From NCBI RefSeq assembly GCF_023055435.1, contig NW_025963890.1, positions 65,844,001 through 65,908,000 of the forward strand: a DNA stretch of 64,000 nucleotides, in the 5' to 3' direction. Below the pieces are notes generated by a model. The model saw only the letters and a program-made list of their open reading frames with translations, was not told where the DNA came from and did not search any database. The DNA is from Haliotis rufescens (lineage: Eukaryota). Numbering within the stretch: position 1 is the first letter of the stretch; each line of letters opens with the position of its first letter. Below are positions 10,901 to 46,900 of this stretch, piece after piece. Made by a program: the position numbers and the translations under genes.

Positions 10901-13900
10901 TTAATTATTGGGAGTCAATGATAAGTCATTGGAAAATGCTTTGATTTCCCATGAATTAATCTGAAACATCATGAAATTTGAACAATGTTCCATAATTTGA
11001 CATATGTGACCTTGACCGTACAGGGGTGACCCAAGACCAAACTAGAGTTTCATCAAATTCCATAACAAAATTAAGGTTATCACCTACATAATCTTTTGAC
11101 TCCTATTTTGTAGGAACATTTGTAACATATTCTCCAAGGGTATTGTTGTTTCTCATGGGAGTACAGGACTGTCCCCAGTAGGCCAAGTTGTCATGTGAGT
11201 GCACCACCTTGCCCATTAGGGGCCATTAGATCTCCTCAGTAAGTCTGTTTCTCATGGGAGCATACGATGTCCTCAGTAAGTCTGTTTCACAAGGGAGCGT
11301 AAGACCTCCTCAGTAAGTCTGTTTCTCATGGATGAGTAAGACCTCCTCAGTAAGTCTGTTTCTCATGGGAGAGTAAGACCTCATTAGTAAGTCTGTTTCT
11401 GAAGGGAGAGTAAGACCTCCTCAGTAAGTCTGTTTCACAAGGGAGCGTAAGACCTCCTCAGTAAGTCTGTTTCCGAAGGAAGTGTAAGACCTTCTCAGTA
11501 AGTCTGTTTCTGAAGGGAGAGTAGGACCTCCTCAGTAAGTCTGTTTCACAAGGGAGCGTAAGACCTCCTCAGTAAGTCTGTTTCACAAGGGAGCGTAAGA
11601 CCTCCTCAGTAAGTCTGTTTCCGAAGGAAGTGTACGACCTTCTCAGTAAGTCTGTTTCTGAAGGGAGAGTAAGACCTCCTCAGTAAGTCTGTTTCACAAG
11701 GGAGCGTAAGACCTCCTCAGTAAGTCTGTTTCTGAAGGAAGTGTAAGACCTCCTCAGTAAGTGTGTTTCTCATGGATGAGTAAGACCTCCTCAGTAAGTC
11801 TGTTTCTCATGGGAGAGTAAGACCTCATTAGTAAGTCTGTTTTCTCATGGGAGCGTAAGACCTCAGTAAGTCTGTTTGTGAAGGGAGAGTAAGAACTCCT
11901 CAGTAAGTCTGTTTCTCAAGGGAGCGTAAGACCTCCACAGTAAGTCTGTTTCACAAGGGAGTGTAAGACCTCCTCAGTAAGTCTGTTTCTGAAGGGAGCG
12001 TAAGACCTCCTCAGTAAGTCTGTTTCTCAAGGGAGAGTAAGACCTCCTCAGTAAGTCTTTTTCTCATGGAAGAGTAAGACCTCCTCAGTAAGTCTGTTTC
12101 TCATGGGAGAGTAAGACCTTATTAGTAAGTCTGTTTCTCATGGGAGCGTAAGACCTCCTCAGTAAGTCTGTTTCTCAAGGGAGAGTAAGACCTCCTCAGT
12201 AAGTCTGTTTCTGAAGGGAGCGTAAGACCTCCTCAGTAAGTCTGTTTCTCAAGGGAGAGTAAGACCTCCTCAGTAAGTCTGTTTCACAAGGGAGCGTAAG
12301 ACCTCCTCAGTAAGTCTGTTTCTCAAGGGAGCGTAAGAACTCCTCAGTAAGTCTGTTTCTCAAGGGAAAGTAAGACCTCCTCAGTAAGTCTGTTTCACAA
12401 GGGAGCGTAAGACCTCCTCAGTAAGTCTGTTTCTCATGGGAGTTCAGGACCCCCCTAGAAAGTTTGTTTATGATGGGAGTGATGTCTGGAATGGAGAGTG
12501 CGAGTCACATGGGCTGTTAGGATGTTAGTGCTGGTTTAGTAGAACTAATATATCGACTAATTCCAGTATAAGGATTCCTACCTGCTGCCAAAACTCTTCC
12601 ATAATGACATAAACGAGGTTAAGCTGCGTGTCCCAGGGCTTATACATGGCACAAAGGTCACATGCGGTCATGGAAACAGTCATTAGCATATGTCTGCAGA
12701 TTGAGAGAGATGTCCACATAATCACACTAGCCACAAAGTAAGCACTAAAATAACAGACTTGTCTCTACATACCTTACTCTGTACTGATTCAGTGACATAC
12801 AACCTTACTCCAAGGCCTTGTTTCCACCAGTAATACAAATCAAAAGGTTTCCAGATAAATTTGCTGGAAAACATAGGCATAATTATACCTACCTAACAGC
12901 AATTTTATCATTTTATTTTTGAAGCATTTTAATCATTTTCATAAAATGTGAAGAGTATGTAGTGACAAGTCTGAGTGTTAACAATAGCATATCTGAAAAA
13001 AAAGTTGAATTAAGGCTTTGCACCATACTTATTCCAATAGAAAAGAGGCATTATAAAACAATCATCAACAGGTAGGTGTACACTGCATTCACCTATCAAC
13101 AGGATATACATTGTACTAATATATGCATAGCAGTTGTGTAGTGTTAATTTTCAGTAATTCCAGAAATATAGAAAGGGTCCTACTCCATAAATGACTTTGA
13201 GGCACTGTGTAGTGAGCGAGTATGGTTTTACATCGCTTTTAGCAATATTCCAGCAATATCATGGCGTGACGAGTGAACGCTTTAACAAGTAGGCTACCCA
13301 ACCGGCCCGAAGCACTGTGTAGAGGAAATGCCACAATATTGCTGTTTTTCCGATATAAGCTGAGCGTTCATTGGTCTGATCAAATCTGCCAATGAACTCG
13401 CTGCTGTATGTATTCATTGGTGATGTCAGAACATAGTGTACACAAACCCTTGAAATAATGATGATTGCATAAATATCTCATTAAGATCATAATTATGTTA
13501 GCAAAGAAATATTTAAAAATCATTGATTCATTTTTCATATTTTTTACAAAATTATTTTCATTGGAATAAATCTGATGTCCCAGACACAGTACAATCCTCC
13601 ATTGCTTACAACTAAGTCAGACAGTTTTATTTCATCTACAGAAGAACTCACAATAACAGGCAAACACAGGTGATGAAAAATAATTGGCAAAACCTCATGA
13701 ATGTCATTGAAGCAAACCCCAGAAAAAGATTGGGATTCATCCAAAGAACATTAAACACTTCTAAAAGTAATGAAGTAAAATAAACACTAATAGGTGGGTC
13801 AAAATATGTTGGAAAGAAAATTTAGAAAATAAAATTAACATTAAATAAACATAAAAATACACGTGTGGATACACGTACTTAAAGAAAAATGGTGTGCATA

Positions 13901-16900
13901 TGCCATCATCAAGTTCATAAATATTTTGAAATGTTGATTTTCAATGTAATTAGAAAAAGTCATAAAAACACTACCCAAAGAAGAAATATATAAATAACTA
14001 GCAAATCCAGAAATGCAGTGATAAAAGAATCAAAACAAAGTGCACAATACAATAAACTAAAGCAAAAACTCATGCACAAATACTCCTTATAACAGTTTTT
14101 ACAGGACTGCCGGTAAGCTATGCTAATGTATCTGCCATGCATACATAGGCCGATTACATTCAGCTGAAACAGGCAAGACAGCCTCACACTCTGTAGAAGT
14201 CACCTGTGCATAAAACTCCTCATAAATGACCTTGACCGTTTCCGCCTGCACGTCCCATGGCTTTGTCATTGCACAAAGGTCACACGATGTCATGGCAATG
14301 TCACGTAACACCCGCCTAGCATGTCAGGGAAAATTGAAAATTATAATTGAACAGATGTCTTTGAATGTCATTAACAACAAGTGACTCTGGAAAACGAATA
14401 CCTTTGTCGTATTAAATTGTTTTTCTTAAATGTGAAATTTATATAACATACTGCTTTCTGATTGAATCATATTCCAGTCAAATGACCATGAAAGTGACAT
14501 TCACAAGCATCTGATTGACCTATTTTGACTTTCATATGCTCATTAAGAGGTACGATTCCTCAAATGAAAGCCACTGGGCTACTGCAACATTCCAGCCGAA
14601 ACTCCAGGGAACTAACTGATGCAATTAACTGCAGAAACACTGTGTATATTGTTAAGAGATTGTATCCTTGACATAAGCGTCTTTGAAAAAGGTGAAGAAG
14701 AAATGATTTATGATCACATATTCTGTAATGAAACTTCTGCACCATGATCTAACCTACAGTGAACGAAATGAGTGAGTAAGTGAGTGAGTTCGGTTTTGAT
14801 GCCGCTTTGAACAGTATTCCAGTTATATCATGGCATATCAGCTAAATGTACAAGGAAAGCCCAAAGTAATGCAGGTCTCAGAGGTTTCCCACTTTGGAGA
14901 AACCCACAATCTTGTTTATGGTGCTGACATACCTAGAAACATAATTGGGGCAAACCAGGAATCGAACCCATAATCATGAGAACAACAGACATCATTGTTT
15001 ATAATTCTAAGAATACTACCTCTATTACATCCTTGCCATAAATCCTGTATTTCGGCTGCAATCACTGAAAACTAATCTTTAGAATTTTCAACAGAACACT
15101 GTCAACCACACATAACTAGTTGTCAAGACAATAGGACCGCCCATCGTCTAGCTCTCTGGCTTGTCAAGGCAGGAAAACCTCACCTCTTTCCCAAAGGCTT
15201 ATCATCGTAGAGACAGAAGATTGGGGAGGAGGGTGGGAGTACTTCTGAACTAATAGAGGTAGTTGCCTTAGAATTATAAACAATGATGTCTATTGTTCAT
15301 ATAATTCTTGCGAATCCTCTTCCTCTATTACAACCAATGAAGTTCAGGAATGGAATAGGTCTTCAGCAACCCATGCTTGCTTGGCGACTAACGGTATCGG
15401 GGGGCCAGGCTCAATGACTTGGTTTGTGCATGTCATCGTATTCCAATTGCGTGGATCGATGCTCATAATATCAATCACTGGATTGTCTGGTCCAGACTCA
15501 ATTATTGAAAGACTGCAATCTTGTAGCTGGAATATTGCTGAGTGCAGCATTAAACAACAAACAACCAAACAACGCTCTATCACATCATTGCCAGAATATA
15601 CCAGAGAGATAGGCGGGTTCTGGCTCTGGTGTGCTCCCAGTGTAGCGGATAGTGGTATAATATTCTTGTGATTTCATCCCCTAATAGTTGTTTCCAATCC
15701 TGAAGGTGAAAAACCAACTATCAAATCACTTCATGTGCAAAACACAAATATGTAGTATCTTCACTAGAACTACCAACTATTTGTTATTATGCAATCATAG
15801 ATGTTCTAAACCTATCTCTCATACATATTATCTTTTCTAATTTTGTGACGTCACTTTCGGTCTATTATACTTCCGGGTGTGACGTCACTTCCAGGTATTG
15901 TTGCTATATGTTGTTATTTCTGGTTCTGACATTCCTTATTTCCCTTCAAATTGTGATGTCAATTCCGGTTTTAAGTGTTCTTTCTGGTTTTGTGACGCCT
16001 TTTCCGGCTAACTCTGGTCCAGGACGTCACTTCCGGTTATGATGACACTTCATTGTGACGCTTCTCCCGAGAGCATAGAATATTGCCTTAATTTCTAGGC
16101 AGTTTATGTTAAGGTTCTTTTCGGAAGTGTTCCAAAGACCTTGAATCCTGATATTGTCCATATTAGGCTCCTGAAAAGAGACATATACCAACAGAGTGGT
16201 CGTATGGGACGAGATGGTACTGTGAGCAACATCTTCAAGGTCTTTGCTTAATGATACTGCAGGGGGGTAAGACATCAAAGATGTAGCATGGATCTGGCCC
16301 TATGTGTACACTAATAATGTCTGGTGATGGTCTCTGACTTCGTTGGATATACCACCAAACCCAGATAAGTTGGCCAGGAAGATCCTGTTGTAACTGTGAC
16401 CTGTCTTGATTCGGTGCCCCCAAACCGTCTAGGTAGACATGAAGATGGACTAGTTGCAGACGAAACCGTGAGTCTGGTGAATATCCAAGGTACTATAGAT
16501 ATCCCGAATGGAAGAACCTGAAATTCATATCTCCTTCCATTGACGGCAAAACATGGAGATATGCTCATGAACCTCACTGTCTGCCTTTCCCAGAGTTGAA
16601 AGCCACTTCTGTATTGATTCCATCTGGAACTGGCGTGGCGGTGCTAGAAAAGACTTGCTCAGGATCTTGCCTGCTATTATCATTCTCATGTCTGGGGAAT
16701 TCTTCTCTGGTGCAAGAAATGTAAAATCATCTGTGATGTAGCAGGGCATAGAGTCATCCCACAGATGACATCACTGCCATGACAGTTTGCTCAAGGGGTT
16801 AACCTCTTTGGTCATGTGGACAAGGTGTCTAGAAAAACCTCAATGACAATGTTTGCAGTTTATAGCTTGGCTCATTCCAGATGGAATCTTTGGCCTTCTG

Positions 16901-19900: not shown

Positions 19901-22900
19901 GAGTGAGTTTGGGTTAACACCGCTTTTAACAGTATTCCAGTTATATCTCGGCGTGTCAGCTTAATGTGGGAGGAAAGCCCAAAGTGATGCAGTTCTCAGA
20001 CGTTTACCACTTCGATGAAACCAACGAGCACGGGTATGGTGCTGACAAACCTAGAAACATAATCGGAGTGAACCGGGATTTGAACCCACAATCATTGGTA
20101 TCTGGCATGCCCAAGGGACGCAACTCTGCACAGCGAATCGCAGCGCCTTAGACGACTGGGCCACCCGTGACCCAATGAGATTAAAAGAAAGAATTATTGA
20201 AAAACATTGAATCATAATCTTTGTCCATGGTTTGCTGTCCAAATCATTGGCTATCACACATGACTGTGTGTGAGTTTACCTGTGTTCCTGTATGTCCCAT
20301 GAAAAGTCATTCCTGTCTGCAATGTCCTTTAACTTGGCTCTGTTCCCAAAGAACAGTGCCAGGTCTGTAGCCAGAATGCAGTGCCGGATGTCACCCAGAA
20401 CCTGCAATGACAGTAGCTATATACAGGAACAATGGCTGCTATCTGGATTCAAGGAGTGTTGATTATGCCTACCTCAAGTATCAATACATACATTCTAAAT
20501 TCTCCATGTTCAACATGGCCCAGTTAAATTTCTAAATCCACCATGTGCAACGCAGCCCAGCTCAATTACTAAATTCTCCATGTTTCATGTTGTCCCGCTA
20601 AATTACAAAATCCTCCATGCTCAACCCATCCTAGCTCAATTACAAAATCCTCCATGTTCAACTCAGCCCAACTAAATTACTAAATTCTCCATATTCCACG
20701 CGGCCCAGCTCAATTACAAAATCCTCCATGTTCCACGTGACAAAGCTACCTTACTAAATTCTTTATGTTCCATACAGCCCAGCGGAATTATTAAAATCTA
20801 CTTTCTTGTAAGATATAGAGTCTATTCCCCATCTGTAGTGCATAGATATACATGTAACTTCTCAGAGACCACCTTACCTTTTTGTATTCTTCTGAACACA
20901 GGTGCTTGAAGATATTGTGACCTTCATGCTGCAACAATCAAATTCCAGTATTACAATCACATGCAAACTGACACCACTGAAACATTACCATACAGGCTGA
21001 TATATATGTATCTGGTCTACAACATAACATAAGATATTACTGTGTTTTATCTATATATTTGATCTGTACCTCAGAGCCAGGTCTACATCATAAGTTGTCC
21101 ACCGGTCTCGAGGGGTATATGGTGTGATGTATGAATGAATGTTGGTAATCCCGACAAGCGATCCCTCAGGGAATAATATGAGTTGTCGCAGGATCATGAG
21201 GGGTACATGGGGTTTTATGCATCCTGGATTAGATTTTATACCATGAACCAAAGAGTGGTATAAAATCTAATGAGGGACGCATAAAACACAGTGATCCCCT
21301 TGTGATCCTGCTACAACAAATTCATCTTACCAACATGCTTTAATGTGACATTGTTATAGAATTAACACACATTCAAAATTGATAGAAAACAGCGATTTGA
21401 TTGAGCTGAGGTTAACTTGTGCAATGTCATGTGACTTATGCGTGATAAGCAAGTTACCTAGATGTTTCCGTATATATTTCCCGGGCTACAAGGAAAATTA
21501 TTTCCCTCTCCATAACCAATCAAAACCTGTGTGCGAAATATGCATGTCGGAAAGCACACGTAAAACCTCCAATCATCTCTCTCTCTCAACAAATGTTATA
21601 TTGTGGATAACATCTTGTTAGTAAAGTACAGATTCTAGTACTTTTTTGGGTTGAGTCCCATCCGGGATTCGAACCCACACTGCCAGAGTGATGCACCTAA
21701 TCGACAGCACACAAAGTCAGCAATCTAACCCACTCAGCCACACTAAGATAATGAAGCCTGCACCATGTGACCCACGACATGCTACTGTGGGGCCCAGCAT
21801 GCTACCTGCAGTATCGCGACTGTCTGGTTGAAGTGATGATGTTCCATGGTGGAGGTGGAGTAGATGGCTGCCAAGGGGGAGGCACTCTTCACCATGAAGG
21901 CGTTGGTCTTCCCGCGATGATCCAAGTCATGACACAGGCATGCCACAAACAGTGCCAGGCTCTGAAACAGATGAACAACATTGGAATTCAACTTCCATGT
22001 GATCTGACGAGGACATTAGTTGACACCGGAGTAAAACAAATGTACCACGAATTACCCCATTTAGATGTTTCAGAATACTTGTGCCTTCACTGATATTAAT
22101 ACATGAAACTGGGGACATTTGGCACACCATGGCACAGTGTGATCACCAAAAGTCATACTGAGGTTAGCTCACTGGTGTCCTGCCCTACTAGCATTACAGT
22201 TATTATACACAGCCTATTAGGGGAATATGTAACTGACTGACCTCAGTTGTTTGATAGGCATTTCTTAGAAGTTGATGGAGGGCAAAGTAGACACAATTTA
22301 TTGTCAAGTGATCCCTCGGGGAATATTATATGTTATTGCAGGATCATGAGGGGTACATGGGGTTTTATGCATCCTGGATTAGGTTTTATACCATGATCCG
22401 GAGAGTGGTATAAAATCTAACGAGGGACGCATAAAACCCAGTAATCCCCTTGTGATCCTGCTACAACAAATTTATCTTACCAACATACTTTAATGTGACA
22501 TTGTTATAGAATTAACACACATTCAAAATTGATAGAAAACAGCGGTTCGATTGAGCTGAGGTTATCTTGTGCAATGTCACGTGACTTATGCGTGATAAGT
22601 TACCTAGATGTTTCCATATTGATCCGTATGGATAACAACTTCTTTATTTTACTGCAAAGGCAACGTTTCGGTATAGACCCTTATAAGTTGTCAAAAAGGA
22701 GTAAACAAGAGTCATGACTGACCTCAAGTGGAGTAAACAGTAGTCATGACAGACCTCAAGTGGAGTAAACAGGAGTCATGACTGACCTCAAGTGGAGTAA
22801 ACAGGTGCCATGACTGACTCAAGTGGAGTTAACAGGAGCCATGACTGACCTCAAGTGGAGTAAACAGGAGACATGACTGACCTCAAGTGGAGTAAACAGG

Positions 22901-31900: not shown

Positions 31901-34900
31901 GTAAGCCACTGATCCCGTTAGTCACCTCTTACAACAAGCATAGTCGCTTTTTACAGCAAGCATGGGTTGCTGAAGACCTATTCTTCCCCTGATCTTCACA
32001 TTCGATAGAAATAGGCCCTGATTGTTCTTCAAAAGCACATGATTAAGGGATAACAAACTGGTGTGGTTCTAGCCTCTGAGTTCACCTTGTGATTGCATGC
32101 ATGTCATGAGGTACTGGGCTGGAGCGCAGTGACATCATCTCCTCCTCAGAACACTGACTGTGGTAGGACAACACCTCCAGTGCCACCTTGTACTTCTGTT
32201 CTGACCGCCGAATCTTCTCATACAGCTGTGAATAAGAACATCAACTGATCTTAGTACGAGTGGAGCAGTTGAATGCGATAACTCCCAGGGTGCTGTTGTA
32301 CAAAACAACCTTAGCGTCAAGATTGCCGTAAGTCTATGTTAAGGTATGGGAGTTACGATCACCTTTGCTCTAAGATCGCTTTGTACAACGGCACCCTGAT
32401 CAACACAAATCACTTTGGATTTTGTTCTGTTATGTTAAGAAAACATATTTTTTTATATAAATATAAAGACTTCAAGTATTCCATTTGTATTCAGGATGAA
32501 GATGCATTATAAGTCAAGTCAGGGGAAAAATAACATGTTCAAACTTCCATCACCACTGACATCAAATTGAAAATATCAACATCAAGCCTTCCTTCACTCC
32601 TCCCTTCACTTTCCCAGTCCTTCCGTCACTCTTTTCCAAGTCCTTTTACATTTACCCAGTTCTTCCTTCACTTGCTCACTCCTCAACTTCTCAAGTTACC
32701 AACACTGTACTTTTGTTAAGTTTGCTAATGCCCTAATTCCGTTTCATTCACTGATTCCCTTCGTCTGTCATCCTTCACTCAATCACACTCCCTTCCGCTG
32801 CTCAGCCTCCCACGTCAACCATTACCTTTGCGTGATGCAGTGCCAGGCCACAGTAGATAGCAAAGGTCTCAAAGGCTTCCTCATCTGCCCTAGTGAATGG
32901 TCCACTCATCTTGTTGACCATCTGAACCACTCCGATGATGCTGAAACACCCACCATGCATCACTCAACTGGGGTGGATTAACCAGGTAACCTGACACTCA
33001 ATATACAGGCGACAGCTATCTCGGACATACTGAACACCAAAAAGGTTTTGAGTATTTTGATAGATCGTATATTGTTTCAAATTTTTATGTCGATGTCAAA
33101 AACACCATCAGTCATAAAGAGTGAGAGAAACATTCCAGCTTAATCGCAACAACCTGTTAACAATTATGTCTGGGGCAGACAAACCAATGGTTGATTGCAT
33201 GAGCCCCGATCAATATCATCTGGGTATGTTGAGACACAATCAGCAATAGCAACACACTGTAAACACCTGATTCTCATTAAAGTTGGTTCTTACAACAAGC
33301 ATGGGGTACTGGTGAACTATTGACCAATAACTCTTAGCTCAGTTGGTACATTTGGTTAAACATATCTTGATACACAGTTCTACAGATTACACAGAATCGA
33401 TCTGATTAGTTAGAGAAAAAATAAGTTATAACTACAAGTAATGTTTTCATGTCCGTCAGCAAAATAGACCGTCTCGGAAGTGGGTATTTTAAAAACTGAC
33501 ATTGCATTGATGAAAAGAACAGAATTCAATACCTGTAACAAGATATTTCAGTTGATAGAGACAATAGGATTCAAAGAAAGATGGTTTGGGGTACCCTCCT
33601 TTCTGTGGTACTGATTTGAAGGGACTTACTTCCCCCTGATGTAGATGGGCATACACAGTATGCTCTTGGTCCTGTAGCCAGTCTGTAGGTCTACGTCGCG
33701 GTTAAACCGGATGTCCCCATAGGCATCCTGGATGTTGAGAACCTCCCCAGTGGTGGCGACGTGGCCAGCCACGCCTTTGCCCATGGGGAATCTACATGCA
33801 GTAATATAGATCAGGTGTAAGAAAATGTACACCTCAGAAAGATTATATTTGAGACAAGCATTTTACTTGAAAACGATGAAAGACTAGAGATATTCAGTTT
33901 TTAAGAAATTTATCAAATCCATGAACAAGGCTTTAGTACCTTACTGACAGACCAAGGTTCATGACTGGGGCTATTTGGAGCTTCAATCTCATGATCATTG
34001 GATGCATAAAGTGCATGTGAAAAAGATCTGACTAAACCGTCCACTCACAAAATCAATCTTTGAACACACTCAATACCTCTGAGGTTTACTTACCATACTA
34101 GATCTCTAATCCCTGTGTCATGTGTAATCTGTCATACTTTCTTGGGCTTAACATCATCAACTTATGGGTGGTAATTCAAGCAAATGTGCACATGTTCCTG
34201 TTACACTTGACAGCAATGCGTCATTAACATACGTGACACTATCAGCAGCAGACCAGCCCATGTTTCAACTTTGATATATTTATGGGACCTGGGGGGGCAT
34301 GGGTGGCCCAGTCGCCTAAGGCGGTGCGATTCGCTGTGCAGAGTTGCATCCCTTGGGCACTCAAGAAACCTATGATTGTGGGTTCAAATCACGATTCTCC
34401 CCGATTATGTTTCTAGGTTTGTCAGCACCATATCTGTGCTCACGGGTTTCACCGAAGTGGTAAATGTCTGAGACCTGCATCACTTTGAGCTTTCCTCCCA
34501 CATTAAGCTGACACGCCGCGATATAACTGGAATACTTTTTAAAGCGGTGTTAAACCAAACTCATTAACTCACTCACTTATGGGACCTGGGTGCAACCTGG
34601 TTTTGTTTGGTCCAACTTGGTTTTCATGTCAACATGCATGTGGTGCAAGTTAAATCAAGTTCCTTAAATCGACCCTGCATATATTTGCAAATTTGAACAT
34701 ACTTGCATTGCAAGAACTGAACGAGAATGGCCTGGCATATTACCATATGATGCATACCCATCCCATGTCGGTGCTGCAGGGTCATTCACTATACATGTTC
34801 ACAGCAGTCAAATTCACCCATTTCCTTTTCCAGTGGGTTTAAGGCTCCTATTTTAGCCATGTCCTGGCATGGATAAGCTTACTGAGAGAGGAGAGGCCAC

Positions 34901-37900
34901 TTGAGACATTTTACAGGCATACATCCTGAATCAGACACAACTGATTTGGGGGATTTCTGCCTCCATTTTAACTTCGCAGTATAAGCAGACACATGAGAAA
35001 ACATTACATGGGGACATTTGATGGATGTTGGAACCTGATTTAGTTCCTCTGTGTTCAGTAATGCAGCTAATATTATGATAATTTCAGTAAAGATCCAACC
35101 TTATTTCTTTCTGTGGTACATTTTCTTCACACTTTCCAGTATCAAATATTCGGGAGAAGAGTTCCTTGGTGCGGGAGTCGAGCATAAATAATGATGCCCG
35201 ATCGGCATGCACAAGAGTTTTTGCAAAATTCTGCCAGAGGAAAAAGTTACCAAAACTTAAGTTATTTGACTTGAAATTGATGGAAATAACTAAATTCAAA
35301 AGTAGGCTAGAGACAACTGAACATAATCAGAGGAGGTAGCAAATAAGTTAAGGGCAAGACAACAAGCACACTAGACTATGGTTACCACAAACACTGGTGC
35401 AAACTCTTGTACAGGGAGTAGGCCTAGGGTTTCTGAAGATACAGTACAAGCTATGGATTGACTAAGGACAGCGCCATCTGGCTTGACTAAGGACAGCGCC
35501 ATCTGGCTTGACTAAGGACAGCGCCATCTACCACAATCATCCACACGCCAAGGCTACAAGCATGTTCAGTATCTAAAGCATGGGTTACTGGGTTTGTCAA
35601 ACATAAATGCACACAAATTAAGCTGATATCATTTGCACAAATGATATAATGAGTATGAAATATTTATATGGAAAAATATCTCAATGTAGTTTCAGAATCA
35701 AGAGCATGAGGATATACTTTAGTCATTTGATCAAATTCATTTTAATTTTTGAAAGGCAGAAAAGATTTGTGCCAATGAATCCTGTCAGTGGAGCTCTGGG
35801 ACTTTAATGTCTTTGTTGAGATTCAGTCGAAGCACCAAATGGTAGAACTTGGCTTACATATAAACAAGATAACAGCACAAATGTAAGGACAAAATGGATT
35901 ATTATCACTACAAAAAGACAATCAAATACTGATCACAAAAGAGGCTTTTTAAAAAAACAACATATGTCAAAGCAGCTGTAGGAACAAATGTTAACAGCAA
36001 TATGACATACAGCTGTAAGTTTTGGAAGTTAGGTCAGACCGTTTAAAAGTCATTGTTTTACAATCAACCTCAGTACTTTGATACATGTTACTTTTGTAAT
36101 ATGGAGGGCATATTTATCTGTAAATCAAGAAAGAAACTGTCCTTCATTTCAAAAGATGGAATCGTACTACAAGATGTTGAAGTGCCAGATGTCCACTGAT
36201 GCACTGGGCTGACCCAGTCACTCTAACCTGATTTCTTTCTGCTGACTACTTTCAGGTGAAGGAACACCCATAGTGCTCCCGACGTCAAAAATACGTGCAA
36301 ATAACTCCTGCCGGTGGTGATCCAATAGGAACAGTGAAGCTCGATCCGCATTCACCAACTTTTGTGCAAAATTCTGTCACAACGGAACAAAATTGGGAAT
36401 ACTACAGGGTAAGAAAATAAAGCAAACCAACAAGGGGTGATTGATAAGTTCTCAGCCTCACATAGAAAGAATTATTCACAATCCATAGTCCTCTTCTACA
36501 TTGATACACTTTTGCCCATGATGTTGGAGTTTCACAGACGTCCTTTGGCTGTCCAAAAAGCTATAGAGTCAAAATGGGTTCCGGATAGAGCTTTCTTCAT
36601 GTTTGGGAACAGATTGAAGTCTGATGGAGCCAGATCAGGAGAATGAGTTGGGTGCTGAAGGAGTTTAAAGCAACACTCGTGAATTGTACCCACTGGCTTG
36701 TGCACTTGCCCATTGTCCTGGGGGAAGAGCACACGATTTCTCAGTTTTCCATGTTTCTTAGTCTCAATTTCATCCCATAATTGCCTCATAAGTCCAGCAT
36801 AATATGCTCCATTTATTGTCTGGCCCTTTGGAAGATCCACCATGAAGACACCTTTGAACACAGGAGGCCATCTTTCCTGGTCATGAGACAGTCTTTGCCT
36901 TCTTTGGTGGTGGTGATGTCAAATCCTGCCACTATTTAGAATCTTGTTAGAACCGAGGGATCATTGATTGTCACAAATCGTTGAAAGAACCTTTCTGGTC
37001 AGCTTCAAACATAGCTAAATCACCACAAGACATGGTGTGAATGGTTGCATATTTGATCAGTTGACGCAAGTTATTCTAGATATACCCCTCTGACATCATG
37101 TCGCTTAGACATTTGTCCACAAGAAACGATTTCCCCATTGTTCAAATCCTTCTATGTGAGGCTCAGAGCTTATCAGTCAACCCTTGTATAAGCATGAGTG
37201 TCTAACATCCTAGAGTTGTGATTGTACCACAAAATAATCATTTGATTCAATAAGCCTTGGTAATTGAGGAAATGGGACTAAGGACATGAATATCATGTTC
37301 AGAGTTTGCTGAATTGATTTCTGTCAGCTGTATCTCAGGCTTAATGTCTTGCAGCTGTACTGCTATGACGCTGTAGCTCACCTGCTGACATTTACTTAAA
37401 GTCATGTGAACATCTTTAATGATAAACAAGTCACATACGCTAAATATTTAAAAACGAATGTGCTATTATTAACGTTTCATAAAAAGTAACAAATTTAACC
37501 TGCTCATCAAGTTTCAATCCCAATGGCAGCAGAAATACCAAAATTTGAATCATCGTCAAAGTAAAGATGCAATCAAAGTGAAACAATATTTCAAATGACT
37601 GACTGCATGGTACTCAGATGTCAAATCTAATTTACTTTACTTCAATGATGGTAACTGAATAGTCAAAGGGTTTTTAATATAACTGCCATTTTGAATACTT
37701 TATGAAAAACACCTGATCCAATTCAGGTACTATCCTTTGAATGAGTATTGTTTCACACTCTCCTTAGAAGTGTTCCAGCAATATCATGGTGGAGAAAAAC
37801 CAGAAAGGAGCTACACACATCTAACCATGTGGGACATCGAGCCCAGGCATTTGGTGTGATCAGTGATTGCATTAAACCACTAGGTTATCTTATCGCCCAT

Positions 37901-40900
37901 CCAATTGCCCTAAATGAAGCAGGTCTTGATTTTCAGGTTCTGAATCTCCCATCTCATATCTGAGTGTTTCTATCAACTTTATATTTTTTCAGAGACAAAG
38001 AGTTAGACTATTTCTGTGGGGGCCTGCTCTCATTATCTTTTGTTTGTTTGTTTGTTGTTTAACACCTCACTCGGCAATATTCCAGCTATATGACGGCGGT
38101 CTGTAAATAATTGAGTCTGGACCAGACAATCCAGTGATTGACATCATGAACATCGATGCACGCAACTGGGATCGATGACATGCATCAACCAAGTCAGCGA
38201 GCCTGACCACCCGATCCCTTTAGACGCTTCTTACGACAAGCATAGTCGCCTTTAACAGCAAGTATAGGTTGCTGAAGACCTATTCTACCCCAGATCTTCA
38301 TGGGTCTCTCATTTCCCCTGGAATTATCTGAAGCTCTAGTGAATACCTTATTATGTTTAACATGCCAAAGATATGCTATACTCTACCTTTAAACATTAGA
38401 GGTCTTAGGAAAATGTATTATGATACAGTGAAACCTATCTAATCCATATGGTAATCCAGAAATCATCTGGATTAACAAATTTCCAGATTGACGAATCACT
38501 GATACAGTCCCTTAAAGAACATACAGATGTTCCTAATAGTAATCTTCTCGAGGACATGGTTTCCAGATTAACAGGTTCCAGACAAACAGGGTTTCATTGC
38601 ATTCATTTGTTCATAGCCATCATCAATCTCCAAACGGTGACCACATCTTGTGATGAGGTGATGAATAGAGACACTGTAATCATTTGGGTACAAACACAAG
38701 TGATGAAAAGCAAAATGGTAAACTATTTGGTGAATAAAAGCCAGCTTCTACTCCGAAGTCTAACAATTGGGTAAACTAAAGATGGGGTAAACTTTCTACG
38801 TGACATAACATGACGAGTCAGGACATTGCAATGCAAAAAAAAGCTACTCATCTCTACAAGGATTTATGTTATGAAGCAAGCCAACAGAAAGATAATTATA
38901 TATACTACTTTCAAAAGACACTGAAATCTACATAAGAAATAAGGTTTCCTGAAGGGCTCAAACATCAGTAAAACATAATCCAACAAAAAGAACAATATGT
39001 TTCATATATATCAATGAATGTCTCAGGAACCACAAGGCTCTGGAGCTCACCTTTCATGATAGAATGCATATGTTAACTGTCTTATATCAACTTTTCAGGC
39101 ATTATTTTTAACAGCTGTACATGACTTATCCTAAGGTATACCAACTCTTTCATTTACTGACAATAATGTGCCTATGGTTTCTCATTTTACAAAAAGGATA
39201 CTGTTAAACATTTTAATGTCTTTAGATATAAGGAGTTAACGAGTGCTTTTAGCAACATTTCAGCAATATCAGGGACACCAGAAAAGGGCTACACACTTTG
39301 CACCCATGTGGAGACTTGAACCCGGGTCTTAGGCGAGATGAGCGAACACCTTAACCACAAGGCTACCCAACCACCTTACCACAAAGTTATTACAAGTATT
39401 GTGATGAAATATTGAATGGTGCTTAAGTTGTAAACACCAAGGTAAGTTGAACATACACCCTGATTGATTCCATGAAAATCCCCCAAATAAGATTGAGAAA
39501 ACGTAGTGCTTCATAACTAGTTTCACAACTAGTATGTGTGCAAAATTTGTAATAACGTACAATCTTTTTAAAATCAAATCTTTTACCCCGATCTAACAAT
39601 ACCACAATAGAATTTCAAGTCAGGTGAGGATTTTCCCACTTTAGCAAGCTAAGGAGTTGGATGCTGATTTGGGGTACTATTATGTACTATTATGTACTAG
39701 TTGTGTGAAGTTGACAGTAACACTTCTGTTGAAAATCTGAAGATTAGTTTTGGTGTGATTGCAGCCAAAATACAGGATTAATGGCAATGATGTAATAGAG
39801 GTAGAGTATTTGCAAGAATTACACCTTTTTTGGTCTAAATGGCAAGGCACTCAGAACCAACAGAATGTAGAAGATATCCACAACAATACAACAGTGCAGA
39901 GTTATGTTTAGGCATGTTGGAAATCATGATTATATTAGTTTTTGAGACACAGAAATCATATATGCTTGTGCCGAGAATTTAGTAGCCCCTATGCTGATTG
40001 GTGCATCAGCAAGTTCACTTGACGCCACCTCCTTATATGGAGGTGTCCTAAGATCTTCATATCAGGAAGAAAACGTATTAGAGTAATAGATCTGATTTTA
40101 ATGAAATTGTGATAAAATTTCCATGGTCTTTGAGTTATGACTGATACAGATATTCTCATTGCTAGATTGCTAGATCCCAGGACTAAATGACAATTAATCA
40201 CGCTATATGCACACCAAGACCTTAGGTCAAGGGGAGTTTCTCAACCAATCAGAAAATCCCTTCAGTTTCAATCACTGTGACAATGACACTTTTGAATTCA
40301 TGTAAAGAATATTCATACTTTATCAATATTGTCATTTATAATATTCCTGAGACAACCAGGAATTACCAGTATCAAGAAATAAACACAAACATATTAGAAG
40401 TGACAACCTACCATTATTTTCATGATGACAGTATCCATGCTGATGATGTCTTGAAAAACGGACCTGTAGAAATCAGCATCGTCTTTTTACATATTTCAAC
40501 ATTACCACAGCATCGTCTTTTTACATATTTCAACATTACCAATCTTAAAGGTTATCTTCAACTCACAAAATACAGTGAGTGAGTGAGTGAGTGAGTGAGT
40601 GAGTGAGTGAGTGAGTGAGCGAGCATGTTTGGCTTAATGAACACTTGAAAAGTACTCATGACACAGGCACAAAAAATCCAAGGGCAGGGCTGTTGGGGCT
40701 GACAAATAAAGAATCATGTTTGGGCTGAAAGTTTGATTCAAACCCAATCTGCAGATCCTGGAATTGGTGAGGGACACACAGGAAATTGAGACAATTATAC
40801 CTCTGGGCCTGGTGGGTCAGTGGGGACAGACAGTGAGTATATGTTAATGTTGGACCTATGTTTGGAGGTTTAGTGTAGACAGACAGTGAGTATATGCTGT

Positions 40901-43900
40901 TGTTGGACTTGTGTTTGGAGCTTTAGTGGGAACAGTGAGTATATGGCATTGTTGAAGTTATGTTTGGAGACTTAGTGTTGACAGACAGTGAGTATATGCT
41001 GTTGTTGGACTTGTGTTTGGAGGTTTAGTGGGAACAGTGAGTGTATGGCATTGTTGAACTTATGTTTGGAGGTTTAGTGTGGACAGACAGTGAGTATATG
41101 CTGTTGTTGGACTTACTTTGTGACTGTTAATAAAAACTCATTGAGTTTTCTTTGTTTTAACATACTGCTATGAACCTGCAAGAAAAAATATATAATTGAT
41201 ACATACATACCAGCAGCAGAAGGAAAAGGCATTCATGGTATTAATTATTAACTGCTGAACAAATGTTTACTTTCGTCATAGGTGTCTTCTAGATAAAGGC
41301 TTTAAATGATCCTTGATGTTAACATTCTTTCATAATAAGTTCATAAAACATATTACCATATTAAATTAAAATGTCCTATGTCATGGTCCTATAGTTGAAT
41401 ACTGTGATATGAAAACAATTCTCGGAAAGGAATACATTACTGTACAATTGTTAGTAAAAATGAAAATCACAAAAAAGATGTTAGAAGCATCTAACAGTAC
41501 AACACAAATAGAGGTCTGTTAGCAAATGAACAGCAAGATACTTAATGCTAAAACAGAGATGACCAGTCATTACCATTATGGTCTAAAGCATTACCTGCCG
41601 TAGCACAATAAGGGGAGATAATCACATGAAGTACACAAAAGCATATCACACAATCACATCTTTGTTTACACAAATAGAAATATTTGTAAAATTTAATAAA
41701 AGAGTTTGCACAACAAACATTTAACAAACCATACTGTAAATTCAAAGTGTACAATACTCTTGTACATTCAAGGTCAATGCGGATCATGTTGCCATAGTTA
41801 CAGGTTTAGTCAACAGAATTTCAAAACAATTTCCTAATCTGAAGTTTGTAAAAACAAACAATGACACACAAGTAGCTTATAAACACAAGTGGCAATAACA
41901 CACAGTGGAATGTTTCGGCAGATAGTCAAGACTGAATATTCTCTGGCACTGTCATTTAATATTTTTCTGAAGACCTTTTCTAAACATATAATCTTAATAA
42001 ACAAAAAAGTGAAAAACTGATTGTTTATACATTAAGTAGGTAAAATAATAATGAGCAAACAATGAATCAGCATTGGCCTCTGGTTGATGTGAATTCACAA
42101 AGACATGCACAGATACAACTACTCTGTTTGGGATACCTCTGTATAAAACAAAACCAGTCCACCCCAAGCTAGTATTCTCTCAGCACCCTGTAGGAACAGA
42201 CACAGGTGAGGCTATAATGTCAGGCACAGACAAGAAGGAGGGGGAGGAGGAGGCAGAGGGACTTATCACAAACTCCCAGAGGCGGAGCCTAGGATTTTGA
42301 AAAAGGGTTTGGGCATGTAATACCAAAGTCAACGAAATGGCTTGGCCGAGGGTGCAGTTAACATGTAAAGTGTCTGGAAAAAGAGGGTGGAGGTGCGCAG
42401 CCCCTGCACCGCAACAATGCCAGTTAACTACAAACTCCATCATGGACAAAATTCAACATTAACACTGGGTGTCATTTCCAAATTTCCGAAACATTGTCTG
42501 ACATTTCAAAAAAATATTTGTAACATTAACTTTTACTTCAATATGTAACTGAATTCATCATGCTGATATGGGTTGTTGTGATCTGAATGAAATCTGGAAT
42601 TTAGCATTCAGCAGCAGCTGATGACGTCAGTCAAGGAAATGTGTTTAGTGGTTTAAAATTCAAAAAGGCACACTAGCAACATTACAGCCATATTGTGTGG
42701 AATTGGTTTAAACAGACTGTACATATCTTTGGTGAAGTAAGGATTGGGGCCTACGGACTACAGATCATAATCAGGGAGAATCTAGGATTTGGAACCCGCC
42801 ACCAACAAATCCTGGTATAACTAAGGGAGGCAACTATTTATCCCCCTTAACAGGAGAAAATATTTTCTGATGATTGTGGTTAAAATTACCAACAGGTATT
42901 TGTCCTATTCCAAATTCAATTTTATAATGACATTACTAATTAGTATATAATAATTAATAAGCACACATAATACACACACCTTCAAAATTATAAAATATTT
43001 TATGGTCACTAAACCGTGTTCTGACTGTGTCAAACTAGGAACACTGTCCTCTACAGAACAAGTCTAGCTAGAGAGTAGATAAAATGATAAGCTTGTCAGG
43101 CCTCTACCTGTGACACTACGGTAAGATATATAAAAATCTGTTAAAGCTGAGGGGTGGAAGGGGAACAGGGTGGCGTTAGCAGGCTGCAAGTGTTAGTCAG
43201 GAGTCTACATTTTCAGACCATCCCTTAGCCGATATGCTTCAGACCCAGCAACAACAAATACCTTAGATCCTTCAAACATATTTGTGACTATTATTTGCAC
43301 CTTTTGTTTTAGTAATGAAAGACTACATGAATAAATCATAAAAATATTGCAAAATAGATTCAAAAGTTCTGACTGATTTCTTTTATGATCACAAAATCTG
43401 TATAACTAAGTTTCTGTGATTATTATCCATATAGCTAAATTTTTTATGAAATATGACTTGAGTTGAAGATTTAGCCATCCAATCTCATAAACTTCTCTTT
43501 TACATCAGATTCCCATCCTCTCTCCATCAACTCCGGACAAACCAGTAAATAAGAGGTCATTACAGGTGAAGTTTCTAGTCTGGCAAGCAGATCGGAAGCT
43601 ACAAAACTCTCAGTACAAATAAGCAAACCATTTGGAATGTGAACAAATGAACATAATTGGGCAGTTCTGGATGGAGAAAATAATGACCCAATGTTGTTGA
43701 TATTTTCATCCTATAGTTTCAGTCTTGTATTTTTAATCAGCTTCATTAGAAGTTCTTTTTGCTGTGGTTTCATTTCTCTTTTACCCAACTTTGATCAAAT
43801 TGCAAATTGCTGTCCCACGATACCAAAGTGTTTGAAAACCCTGGCCTGTAGGACCTGTGTCACCAAATTTTCACATGAGAATTTTGCTCAACACCTCCAC

Positions 43901-46900
43901 CTGTTGTCCAACATCTACATACATACAGAGTAGACCTGTGAAGATCCAGGGTAGAATAGGTCTTCAGCAACCCATGCTTGATTATTCGCCATCATATAGC
44001 TGGAATATTGCTGAGTGTGGCGTCAAACAACAATAAACAAGCATACAGAGTAGCTGTGAAACTGAATTTTAAATCAATATAATCTTAGATCCATATGTTT
44101 TGATTAATAATATGTTTTTGTCTTGCGTGAAGATTCTGAATCAGTGCCATTGATAACATGGGACAACCTATGGGCTTCAAAACACCAGGGGGGACGGGTC
44201 AATGTTTGCTCAGGGCTGATGATCTCCTGTCAAGGGTTTGTCAGATCAGGATGGAGAGAGGTACAGAATCAAGTGTTTTATATACATATATATTTAACAA
44301 GACTGAGCTGTGGCAAGGAATTTGACTGAGAAAGTACTACAGAATGTTGGTAGGTCTGATTGCTAGGGTGAGATGAAGGCAAAGATGGTAATATGTAAGC
44401 CTGGTTTAGGATCTGGATTATATGGTTTACCTCAACATAATCTACTAGCATATCTGCCCACATTAGAAGAAGGATTGACACCTACAAAATGAACATTGTC
44501 ACATGACAGTAAATGTGTGCCTCAGTATTTCAACTTTTCACAGAAGTCATTAACTTACAGATCTCGTGGATCATATACATCTGACTGCAAGTCATTGAGT
44601 GCCAAGTGTAGGCAAACATACAAGTGGCATGAAGAATGCTCTCCACAGGCAGGGATGATAATAACACAAATGCTAACTACACGATCTCATTTCAATCAGC
44701 TTTTACTCAAACATTGGGCAAAGGGGACCTCACTGGGTCAACATCTAGACTTATTCTAAAGAATGATATCATAGGGCAACAAAATCAAAACAGCAGATAT
44801 TTAAAATGTGAATTTCAATGAGACTTAAGATGCACTTAATTGAATTCATAAATTTAACAATTTCAACCATTTTTCAGTATCAAACGGACAAAATTCATGC
44901 CCTACAAAACTAATATCTTACCTCTTCTTCTTCTTCTGTAAATGACGTATATTTAAAGTTTCTGTAAAATTCTACTACACCTGAAACCAAGTTATTTCAT
45001 GTTACTTTGCTTGCTAAACTAAATGAGGACAATGACAATGAGGATTTAAAGACAAAGGAGTATTTGTAATTTTGATGTTACTCTCATTCAAAGTAGTCCA
45101 GGTTAAACAAGTTTTTCTCAAACTAATGAAACAAGTATCATAAACAATGTCATATATTGTAATCACTGTCATGGTGGGTCCCTGGAGTGAACTATCCACT
45201 GAGTGAGTGAGTGGTTTTATGCTGCTTTTGTCAATATTCCAGCAGTGGTGATGATACAGGTTAAGGATGTCTTGGACCTTACAAAGGTCAATCAGCTCCC
45301 TCAGATGCATCTTCCTGAGGCAAGGGAATTAACTGACTGTAAAAGTCCAGTTTCCACCCTTGCAAAGCTACCTCCCTTGTCTCGGTAAAATGCCTCAGAT
45401 GTTACAATTCACTCTTCAGAGTGCATCCCTCAGTCATACAAGGTTCTGCTGATCACTGGTTTGAATACAAGATTCACTCTGATTATGATCCTTGGTCAGA
45501 TCCATTTCAGTGAATAGGGCTTTTAAAAAATGGTAAATGCCTGTGTCCCAATTGTCTCTAACACATTGGACTTTCCATGACAAGCTGTGATACAATTAAA
45601 ATACTGTTCAAAGCAGGTCTAAACAAAACTCACATCAATATGCAAAACAGTTATCATAAAGTATTTATTATAACAGTTAGATAGTTTAAATCCACTATAA
45701 ACAAAACTGTGAGTATTTAATAAGTAGTATCTGATCTTCAATCTCAGACTCTGTGGGGCAGTGGACAGCCTTGTGGTCATATTGCTGGAATATTTGCTAA
45801 AAGCGGTGTAAAACCCAACATTAGTGAATGAAGCACCCTTTAAATATCTATTCAATCTCTTGTTATACGTTGTTATACAGTCATCATACATTACATCAAG
45901 TAATACAAAAAGTATACTAGAATGAATAAAAAGTACGAGAACATTTTTAAAGGAAGAATTTATTTGCCACAATAAATAAATAAATTCAAAGTTTTTAGAT
46001 GATTCATGCAACTTCATGATTTGAAAATTTAGTCCTTAAATTCTTTCCAAAGTCACAAATTCTAGATGTTGACTGAAGCAACGAGATACTGATTGAACGG
46101 TAGTGATTAAACAACAGACAAGGCCTCTTATTACCTAATAAGGACCCCCTGCCATCCTGCAGTGGCAGGGCTAGCACTGAATGAACCTTGATATTGCCGT
46201 GTCCCAAACCCTCAGGGAACCGACCGTCCTGAAACATAGTGACACAACATATATCTTATTACAACACTCTAAAACCAATATAAACATCATAGCATTTGGA
46301 AAATAGTCACTTTGTAGTCCGGAGTCCACTGTAATGTAAGTTATGTCGATCATGGTGACCTGATAGAATCGAGTCTGGACCAGGCAAACCAGAAATTGAA
46401 AGCATGAGCAGTGAACTGCATCATCAGGGCTAAAATTTGCAACAGTAAATCAGCAGTGGCTGAGTCCTACCACCCTATCCAACTTCGTCACCTAATACGA
46501 CAACCTGTAGTGCTTGGGATCCATTTTAACCCTGGGGCCCATTATGTTACAGAGACAAAAAACAGATATATAATCTGAACCATCTGCCCACTACAATGTC
46601 AACTGCCTCATCACGTAGAGAGTTATCTGCCCACTTAAATGTCCACTGTCTCATAGGAAGAGATTTATCTGCCCACTAAAACATATGATGTCTCATCAGG
46701 TAGAGAGTTATCTGCCCACTAATTTATCCAGTGCCTCATAGGAAGAGAGTTATCTGCCCACTAAAACATATGATGTCCCATCAGGTAGAGAGTTATCTGC
46801 CCACTAAAATGTCCACTGCATCATCACAAACAGAGTTGTCTGCCCACTAAATCATTCGCTTTATAGTGTAAAAAGAACTTCAACTCGCAGTCCAGTGTCA

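What the first reader, a model, noticed from the sequence alone, without database searches (positions are those of the whole stretch)
12582..44481. Three independent mutually exclusive exon pairs in one PDE10A-like gene (up to 8 isoforms)
Seen: E6a/E6b (51/51 nt, phase 0-0), E9a/E9b (146/131 nt, phase 0-2) and E18a/E18b (112/112 nt, phase 2-0). Each pair has intact GT-AG sites, open frames and clear protein paralogy, but strongly diverged DNA, so they are old and retained rather than assembly duplicates. Known: vertebrate PDE10A varies mainly through alternative first exons; I know of no internal mutually exclusive exons in it. Inference: one locus can recombine the GAF-A output helix, the GAF-B ligand domain and the catalytic pocket, acting as a splice-encoded PDE family. 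Two of the six exons (E6b, E9a) are absent from the ORF track.
Basis: partly seen in the sequence, partly recalled or inferred. Interest (0 to 1): 0.92.

Follow-up and report, generated by a model that had tools for sequence, protein, structure and literature searches.

The report
Three swappable exon pairs, abalone PDE10
The abalone counterpart of the brain enzyme PDE10 has three pairs of duplicated exons, and each transcript uses only one of each pair. The pairs are real and shared with other molluscs and a ribbon worm, but public RefSeq gene models already list them as isoforms.

Summary
Confirmed. All six exons lie on the minus strand at the stated places, with the stated lengths, phases, AG/GT sites and open frames.

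The gene is the Haliotis rufescens PDE10 orthologue, which RefSeq calls 'probable 3',5'-cyclic phosphodiesterase pde-5'. Its 11 RefSeq isoforms (X1-X11) match the window exons without a mismatch. Each isoform carries exactly one of E6a/E6b, one of E9a/E9b and one of E18a/E18b. Six of the eight combinations are listed.

Spliced transcript contigs show E9b-E10-E11 in one study and E9a-E10-E11 in another.

The same alternative positions appear in isoforms of Babylonia, Mya, Argopecten, Pecten and the nemertean Lineus. E9 and E18 variants group by type, not by species (support 96-100). The duplications are therefore older than the mollusc-nemertean split.

For E9 and E18, using both or neither exon shifts the frame into early stops. 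E6 stays in frame either way, and its exclusion mechanism is unknown.

E18 swaps Tyr for Met at the site of human PDE10A Tyr693, in the inhibitor selectivity pocket.

The observation and reading are right. Novelty is modest, because public models already hold the isoforms; I found no paper on them. This scan also noted each pair separately on this window, and similar pairs in other abalone genes.

The parts
44922..44980 (-). E5, constitutive exon (59 nt), end of the GAF-A beta sheet; ends in phase 0
   Evidence: Sequence read. The peptide is found with 0 mismatches in all RefSeq isoforms.
44431..44481 (-). E6a, 51 nt, phase 0-0; last helix of GAF-A, 'WAD' type; the commoner form in gene models
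   Evidence: Present in H. rufescens isoforms X1, X3-X5 and X7-X11 and absent from X2 and X6. The a-type is conserved in Littorina, Babylonia, Mya, Argopecten, Pecten and Potamilus.
42137..42187 (-). E6b, 51 nt, phase 0-0; alternative last helix of GAF-A, closer to the gene's own GAF-B helix
   Evidence: Present in isoforms X2 and X6 and in H. cracherodii X1. The Gigantopelta models carry an 82 % identical b-type; Babylonia and Argopecten list a second variant here.
41117..41175 (-). E7, constitutive exon (59 nt), linker helix after GAF-A; strong pyrimidine-rich acceptor, GTAAGT donor
   Evidence: Peptide found with 0 mismatches in all isoforms.
40412..40463 (-). E8, constitutive exon (52 nt), start of GAF-B
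   Evidence: Peptide found with 0 mismatches in all isoforms.
36228..36373 (-). E9a, 146 nt, phase 0-2; first strands of GAF-B with the longer loop (48 aa)
   Evidence: Spliced straight to E10 in run X3, contig record 14. In isoforms X1-X4, X7, X9 and X10. Forms an a-type clade with Littorina, Babylonia, Lineus and sea urchin.
35100..35230 (-). E9b, 131 nt, phase 0-2; the same part of GAF-B with a loop 5 aa shorter (43 aa)
   Evidence: Spliced to E10 and E11 in run X1, contig record 1, which has no E9a piece. In isoforms X5, X6, X8 and X11. Forms a b-type clade with bivalves, Gigantopelta, Babylonia and Lineus.
33630..33791 (-). E10, constitutive GAF-B exon; acceptor shared by E9a and E9b
   Evidence: Best solved-structure match is PDE10A GAF-B 2zmf, E 4e-19. 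Contig pieces.
32826..32940 (-). E11, constitutive GAF-B exon
   Evidence: Contig pieces in all four runs.
20280..20404 (-). Its 5' end was not fixed here.
14204..14315 (-). E18a, 112 nt, phase 2-0; catalytic-pocket helix with Tyr at the site of human PDE10A Tyr693
   Evidence: Solved-structure matches: PDE6 2e-5, PDE10A 3.5e-5. The alignment puts its Tyr on the PDE10A Tyr. In isoforms X3, X7 and X11. a-type clade, support 100/99.
12582..12693 (-). E18b, 112 nt, phase 2-0; the same helix with Met at that site; the commoner form in gene models
   Evidence: Solved-structure matches: PDE6 2e-6, PDE10A only 0.014-0.03. In isoforms X1, X2, X4-X6 and X8-X10. b-type clade, support 100/99.
9417..9497 (-). 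E19, constitutive catalytic exon; acceptor shared by E18a and E18b. It ends with Glu where PDEs have the invariant Gln.

Best explanation
The window holds most of the Haliotis rufescens orthologue of PDE10A. RefSeq names it 'pde-5' after the C. elegans PDE10 orthologue.

Three ancient tandem exon duplications give three clusters of mutually exclusive exons. Each mRNA takes one exon from each cluster.

- E6a/E6b encode alternative versions of the last helix of GAF-A, which leads into the linker to GAF-B.
- E9a/E9b encode alternative first strands of GAF-B, with a loop that differs by 5 residues.
- E18a/E18b encode alternative versions of a catalytic-pocket helix. They place Tyr (as in PDE10A) or Met at the site of human Tyr693.

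Shown: the exon anatomy; one-of-each usage in public models; both spliced E9 forms in RNA-derived contigs; conservation of both types across molluscs and a nemertean.

For E9 and E18, exclusivity is enforced by the reading frame. With both exons or neither, translation runs into stop codons. The likely removal of such mRNAs by nonsense-mediated decay is inferred.

Also inferred: the pairs change allosteric coupling (E6), ligand response of GAF-B (E9), and substrate or inhibitor preference (E18). The cell would choose among them by regulated splicing.

How E6 avoids double inclusion or skipping is unknown, because both outcomes stay in frame.
For: - Anatomy.
- Family: E10, E15 and E16 best match solved PDE10A. 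C. elegans pde-5 is the PDE10 orthologue (PMC12346295).
- Gene models: 11 H. rufescens isoforms and 2 H. cracherodii isoforms carry exactly one of each pair. The window peptides match at 0 mismatches, and six of eight combinations occur.
- RNA: contig record 1 of run X1 joins E9b|E10|E11. Record 14 of run X3 joins E9a|E10|E11 and skips E9b. Both runs are the same organism but different studies.
- E6 in RNA: record 14 starts 3 nt upstream of E7. That fits a graph branch between exons ending ..TGAG (E6a) and ..AGAG (E6b). This is indirect.
- Conservation: two variants at the same positions in Babylonia (E6, E9), Mya (E18), Argopecten (E6, E18), Pecten (E18) and Lineus (all three).
- Trees split a-type from b-type with support 100/99 (E18) and 96/98 (E9).
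- Frame: both or neither gives early stops for E9 and E18, but not for E6.
- The Tyr/Met site aligns with the PDE10A Tyr. Tyr693 shapes the PDE10 selectivity pocket (PMC4694998).
Against: - I tested RNA junctions directly only for E9. For E6 and E18 the support is automatic RefSeq models, cross-species models and an indirect contig-end argument.
- RefSeq combinations may be assembled from partial evidence, so independent choice at the three sites is unproven.
- In runs X2 and X4, E9b was seen only in unspliced low-depth contigs, so its use may be restricted.
- E6a and E6b are barely similar to each other. Low-level joint inclusion or skipping of E6 would stay in frame and cannot be excluded.
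- No functional data exist for any variant.
Confidence: 0.88

Rival explanations
1. One member of each pair is a dead duplicate (pseudo-exon) that merely kept an open frame. The gene makes a single protein core.
For: In runs X2 and X4, E9b appears only in unspliced contigs. H. asinina models list only the a/a/b combination. The E6a/E6b similarity is close to the chance level.
Against: - Both E9 forms are spliced to E10 in contigs.
- All six exons are used in RefSeq isoforms.
- Both types are conserved by type across molluscs and a nemertean.
- E18b matches solved PDE catalytic domains better than E18a does. A decaying copy would not.
Confidence: 0.04
2. E9 and E18 are true either/or pairs, but E6a/E6b are not strictly exclusive. 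Because 51 nt keeps the frame, some transcripts carry both or neither, as with a cassette exon.
For: Both-in and both-out products stay in frame. I found no frame-based, steric or U12-type barrier: the E7 acceptor is an ordinary pyrimidine-rich one and the introns are 440-2243 nt long. An earlier follow-up on another abalone pair of in-frame exons (s1-813583) reported non-strict use.
Against: None of the listed isoforms of Haliotis, Babylonia, Argopecten or Lineus has two or no E6-type segments. Two copies of the terminal GAF-A helix, or none, would probably disturb the domain (inference).
Confidence: 0.25
3. The three choices are coupled rather than independent, so far fewer than eight proteins are made.
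For: Only six of eight combinations are listed, and both missing ones pair E6b with E18a. Automatic models can combine local evidence that never occurs on one molecule.
Against: Each variant is listed with both variants of at least one other site. The clusters are 6-20 kb apart, with no obvious link between them.
Confidence: 0.35

Closest known systems
Mutually exclusive exon clusters from tandem exon duplication (for example Drosophila 14-3-3zeta, Mhc and Dscam; coq-2 in helminths, PMC7434440)
   Same: Adjacent paralogous exons of equal or similar length and identical phase, with one used per transcript. In two of the three clusters the frame penalises use of both or neither. The clusters are old and conserved by variant type.
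   Different: Three separate two-exon clusters in one phosphodiesterase gene. No competing RNA structure or splice-site incompatibility was shown here. The E6 cluster is frame-neutral.
Vertebrate PDE10A
   Same: Tandem GAF-A and GAF-B domains plus a class I catalytic domain. The best solved-structure matches are to PDE10A. The E18a type keeps the Tyr at the selectivity-pocket site.
   Different: From background knowledge, vertebrate PDE10A is known to vary mainly at its N-terminus; my searches found no report of internal duplicated exon pairs. The mollusc protein has Glu where all PDE families have the invariant pocket Gln.
C. elegans pde-5 (PDE10 orthologue)
   Same: It is the family after which RefSeq names the abalone gene.
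   Different: The review PMC12346295 lists one isoform for it, so the three pairs are not a general invertebrate feature.
Other abalone exon pairs noted by this scan (ELAV s1-812732, RBPMS s1-813583)
   Same: Same genome. Old tandem exon pairs that are shared with other molluscs, already present in RefSeq isoforms and, for the ELAV pair, undescribed in papers according to its follow-up.
   Different: Those are single pairs in RNA-binding proteins. Here three pairs sit in one enzyme, one of them in the active site.

Membership tests
Mutually exclusive exon cluster (tandem-duplication type) | Neighbouring exons of the same or similar length with identical entry and exit phases and intact splice sites | tested here: met
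   51/51, 146/131 and 112/112 nt. AG/GT at all six exons. Phases 0-0, 0-2 and 2-0.
Mutually exclusive exon cluster (tandem-duplication type) | The two exons are homologous to each other | tested here: met
   E9 and E18 are clearly homologous (54 % amino-acid identity for E18; DNA identity 58 % and 71 %). E6 is only marginal: score 21 against a decoy at 20.
Mutually exclusive exon cluster (tandem-duplication type) | Transcripts carry exactly one member | tested here: met
   All 13 Haliotis RefSeq isoforms of the 90 % cluster carry one of each pair. Spliced contigs show E9a or E9b, never both. I did not test E6 and E18 on reads.
Mutually exclusive exon cluster (tandem-duplication type) | A mechanism that prevents joint inclusion or joint skipping | tested here: inconclusive
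   A frameshift with early stops for E9 and E18. None was found for E6. One 19-nt inverted repeat flanks E6b but lies in transposon-like sequence.
PDE10 family of class I cyclic nucleotide phosphodiesterases | Two GAF domains followed by a PDEase_I catalytic domain | tested here: met
   The precomputed Pfam domains of the matching RefSeq protein are GAF families plus PF00233.
PDE10 family of class I cyclic nucleotide phosphodiesterases | Closest to PDE10A rather than to PDE2, PDE5, PDE6 or PDE11 | tested here: met
   E10 matches the PDE10A GAF-B at 4e-19. E16 matches PDE10A at 2e-19 against PDE2A at 6e-16. E15 matches at 4e-12 against 1e-10. E18b alone leans towards PDE6/5.
PDE10 family of class I cyclic nucleotide phosphodiesterases | Invariant substrate-binding glutamine before the (V/L)GF motif | tested here: not met
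   Glu stands at this place in all ten mollusc orthologues checked; Gln stands there in Lineus. Catalytic activity is not testable here.

The most novel reading that the evidence does not exclude
The three clusters are chosen independently and in a tissue-specific way. One locus would then yield eight or more PDE10 enzymes that differ in pocket chemistry (Tyr or Met at the Tyr693 site), in GAF-B response and in GAF-A to GAF-B coupling. That would be a splice-encoded enzyme family dating at least to the lophotrochozoan ancestor and absent from the vertebrate and nematode PDE10 genes.
Probability: 0.3. Interest if true: 0.6.

Novelty: new member of a known kind. Interest (0 to 1): 0.42.

Why it matters
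PDE10A is a drug target, and its selectivity pocket is defined by Tyr693. Here an old, conserved splice switch changes that very residue and two regulatory GAF elements within one gene.

It offers natural paired variants for asking how pocket and GAF changes alter substrate choice, inhibitor binding and allosteric control. It also adds a multi-cluster case to the catalogue of ancient mutually exclusive exons in lophotrochozoans.

The practical novelty is limited, because RefSeq already lists the isoforms. What is missing is any description or functional test.

Tried and rejected
- **Representative search.** The search with E10 returned only multi-GAF proteins of protists, fungi and insects. 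None was a close orthologue.
- **Exon-sized query.** An exon-sized protein query found no candidates because of the length filter.
- **Chytrid backbone first.** An alignment with a chytrid backbone as first row plus exon rows gave only fungal, protist and bacterial hits. The same idea with the window exons as first rows (A7) found the abalone and other mollusc proteins.
- **Many short exon rows.** MAFFT scattered them across the alignment, so only cleanly aligned rows were kept.
- **Homology of the E6 17-mers.** Their match to 150 GAF-PDE proteins is no better than that of shuffled peptides.
- **U12-type intron after E6b.** Rejected. The donor is GTATCC, but the E7 acceptor is pyrimidine-rich and has no branch-site match at the right distance.
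- **Reads for E18 and E6.** Not possible. Only one read-laying run was allowed, and the E18 stretch holds a 1.2-kb minisatellite.
- **Joined exons.** Exons were joined only inside local scripts, to read frames.
Full report
**Observation**

The gene lies on the minus strand.

| Exon | Coordinates | Length | Phase |
|---|---|---|---|
| E6a | 44481-44431 | 51 nt | 0-0 |
| E6b | 42187-42137 | 51 nt | 0-0 |
| E9a | 36373-36228 | 146 nt | 0-2 |
| E9b | 35230-35100 | 131 nt | 0-2 |
| E18a | 14315-14204 | 112 nt | 2-0 |
| E18b | 12693-12582 | 112 nt | 2-0 |

All six have an AG acceptor, a GT donor and an open frame. DNA identity within pairs is 43 %, 58 % and 71 %. These are old copies, not assembly duplicates.

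E9 and E18 are obvious paralogues. E6a and E6b are only weakly alike, with an ungapped BLOSUM62 score of 21. They are each other's best match among 144 splice-flanked 51-nt open segments in the window, but an unrelated plus-strand segment scores 20. Neither 17-mer matches GAF-PDE proteins better than shuffled versions do. The E6 pair therefore could not be validated from the window alone.

**Neighbouring exons**

I fixed the flanking exons:
- E5 at 44980-44922.
- E7 at 41175-41117.
- E8 at 40463-40412.
- E10 at 33791-33630 and E11 at 32940-32826.
- E17 ending at 20280, and E19 at 9497-9417.

**Family**

The best solved-structure matches are to PDE10A:
- E10 matches the PDE10A GAF-B domain at E 4e-19.
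- E16 matches PDE10A at 2e-19, against PDE2A at 6e-16.
- E15 matches PDE10A at 4e-12, against PDE2A at 1e-10.

**RNA evidence for E9**

One read-laying run was allowed. I put it on 32750-38749 with four runs from four studies and three closely related organisms. The runs are kept as contigs whose RNA origin is only a guess, but several contigs are spliced, so they derive from RNA.

- Run X1, record 1 (2902 nt) joins E9b, E10 and E11 without a break and has no E9a piece.
- Run X3, record 14 (2297 nt, same organism, another study) joins E9a, E10 and E11 and skips E9b.
- Runs X2 and X4 show E9a in spliced contigs, and E9b only in low-depth unspliced ones.

Both E9 exons are therefore spliced to the same acceptor, one at a time, and the dominant form differs between samples.

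Record 14 begins exactly 3 nt upstream of E7. With a 31-letter word graph, that is where paths ending in ..TGAG (E6a) and ..AGAG (E6b or E5) would merge. This is indirect support for two upstream partners of E7 in that sample.

**Public gene models**

Exon-sized queries cannot reach full-length proteins in the protein search. An alignment with the window exons as first rows and a long backbone as last row did reach them (A7).

The window gene is the Haliotis rufescens 'probable 3',5'-cyclic phosphodiesterase pde-5', with RefSeq isoforms X1-X11. C. elegans pde-5 is the PDE10 orthologue (PMC12346295). Earlier notes of this scan had already said that the genome is an abalone's and that RefSeq lists such isoforms. 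That was the lead.

Every window exon peptide I tested occurs without a mismatch in these proteins. Every isoform carries exactly one of E6a/E6b, one of E9a/E9b and one of E18a/E18b.

| Isoform | E6 | E9 | E18 |
|---|---|---|---|
| X1 | a | a | b |
| X2 | b | a | b |
| X3 | a | a | a |
| X4 | a | a | b |
| X5 | a | b | b |
| X6 | b | b | b |
| X7 | a | a | a |
| X8 | a | b | b |
| X9, X10 (other N-termini) | a | a | b |
| X11 | a | b | a |

Six of eight combinations are listed, and no isoform has both or neither member of a pair. H. cracherodii lists E6b in X1 and E6a in X2. H. asinina lists only a/a/b.

**Conservation**

I took the segments of orthologues that align with E6, E9 and E18. Two alternative versions occur at the same positions in these species:
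- Babylonia: E6, and E9 with 47 or 43 residues.
- Mya: E18.
- Argopecten: E6 and E18.
- Pecten: E18.
- The nemertean Lineus: all three.

Maximum-likelihood trees split the E18 segments into an a-type and a b-type group with support 100/99. They split the E9 segments likewise with support 96/98. Each group holds gastropods, bivalves and Lineus. The duplications therefore predate the mollusc-nemertean split.

The single sea urchin model falls with the a-types. The trees are unrooted, so they cannot tell loss in deuterostomes from origin in lophotrochozoans.

E6 is too short for a tree. The a-type keeps a Trp-Ala-Asp motif in all molluscs. The b-type is 82 % identical between Haliotis and Gigantopelta.

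Tandem order in other species is therefore inferred, not seen.

**How it works**

*Shown.* For E9, using both exons or neither shifts the frame and gives stops within E9b or E10. For E18, stops follow 11 codons into E18b or 9 codons into E19.

*Inferred.* Such mRNAs are removed by nonsense-mediated decay or give truncated protein, so only one-exon products persist.

*E6.* Both outcomes stay in frame. I found no barrier:
- The introns are long, at 440, 2243 and 961 nt.
- The E7 acceptor is an ordinary one, although the E6b donor reads GTATCC.
- The only notable inverted repeat around E6b is 19 nt long and lies in transposon-like sequence.

Whether E6 is strictly either/or is therefore open.

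**Functional reading (inference)**

- E6 encodes the last helix of GAF-A, which leads into the linker. The b-type resembles the gene's own GAF-B helix more than the a-type does.
- E9 encodes the first strands of GAF-B and a loop that differs by five residues.
- E18 encodes a pocket helix. The alignment to solved PDE10A puts the Tyr of E18a on the PDE10A Tyr, and E18b has Met there. Tyr693 shapes the PDE10 selectivity pocket, and PDE5 has Ala at that site (PMC4694998).
- E18a matches PDE10A better, while E18b matches PDE6 and PDE5 better.

**Comparison and novelty**

This is a textbook kind of feature, namely mutually exclusive exons from tandem duplication. It is unusual in having three clusters in one phosphodiesterase, one of them in the active site.

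Four literature searches found no paper describing it. A preprint on mouse Pde10a splicing concerns another event. RefSeq isoforms of several species already contain the variants, so the data are public. What is new is only the recognition and dating.

**Limits**

- I saw E6 and E18 junctions only in automatic models.
- Independent choice at the three sites is untested.
Exons were joined only in local scripts, to read frames.

Noticed in passing
window 9417-9419 (minus strand): Glu stands where class I PDEs have the invariant substrate-binding Gln, just before the VGF motif. It is Glu in all ten mollusc orthologues checked (gastropods and bivalves) and Gln in the nemertean Lineus.
   Followed up: partly
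window 11228-12442, 22698-23601 and 27702-28295: Three long intronic minisatellites: 37 bp x 33, 32 bp x 28 and 35 bp x 17 copies, at 89-96 % matches. The second abuts the low-coordinate end of the exon at about 23.6 kb.
   Followed up: no
window 34150-34650 and 37950-38350: Two intronic repeat fragments have contig depths of 1e5-1e6 in all four runs, with many variant copies and joints. This looks like a very abundant, expressed short interspersed element. Related open frames recur across the window.
   Followed up: no
window 36532-36861 (minus strand): A 109-aa open frame in the E8-E9a intron looks like the C-terminal part of a mariner-type transposase, judged from background knowledge of the motif.
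   Followed up: no
RefSeq isoforms P0386, P0389, P0385, P0388, P0394, P0384: The gene has further alternative events: an optional Ser at residue 203, an optional 6-residue segment at 564-569 between GAF-B and the catalytic domain, and two shorter N-termini. The number of possible proteins therefore exceeds eight.
   Followed up: partly
window 41964-41982 and 43952-43970: A 19-nt inverted repeat, 89 % complementary, brackets E6b and could loop it out. One arm lies in a transposon-like fragment, so it may be a chance or species-specific feature.
   Followed up: no
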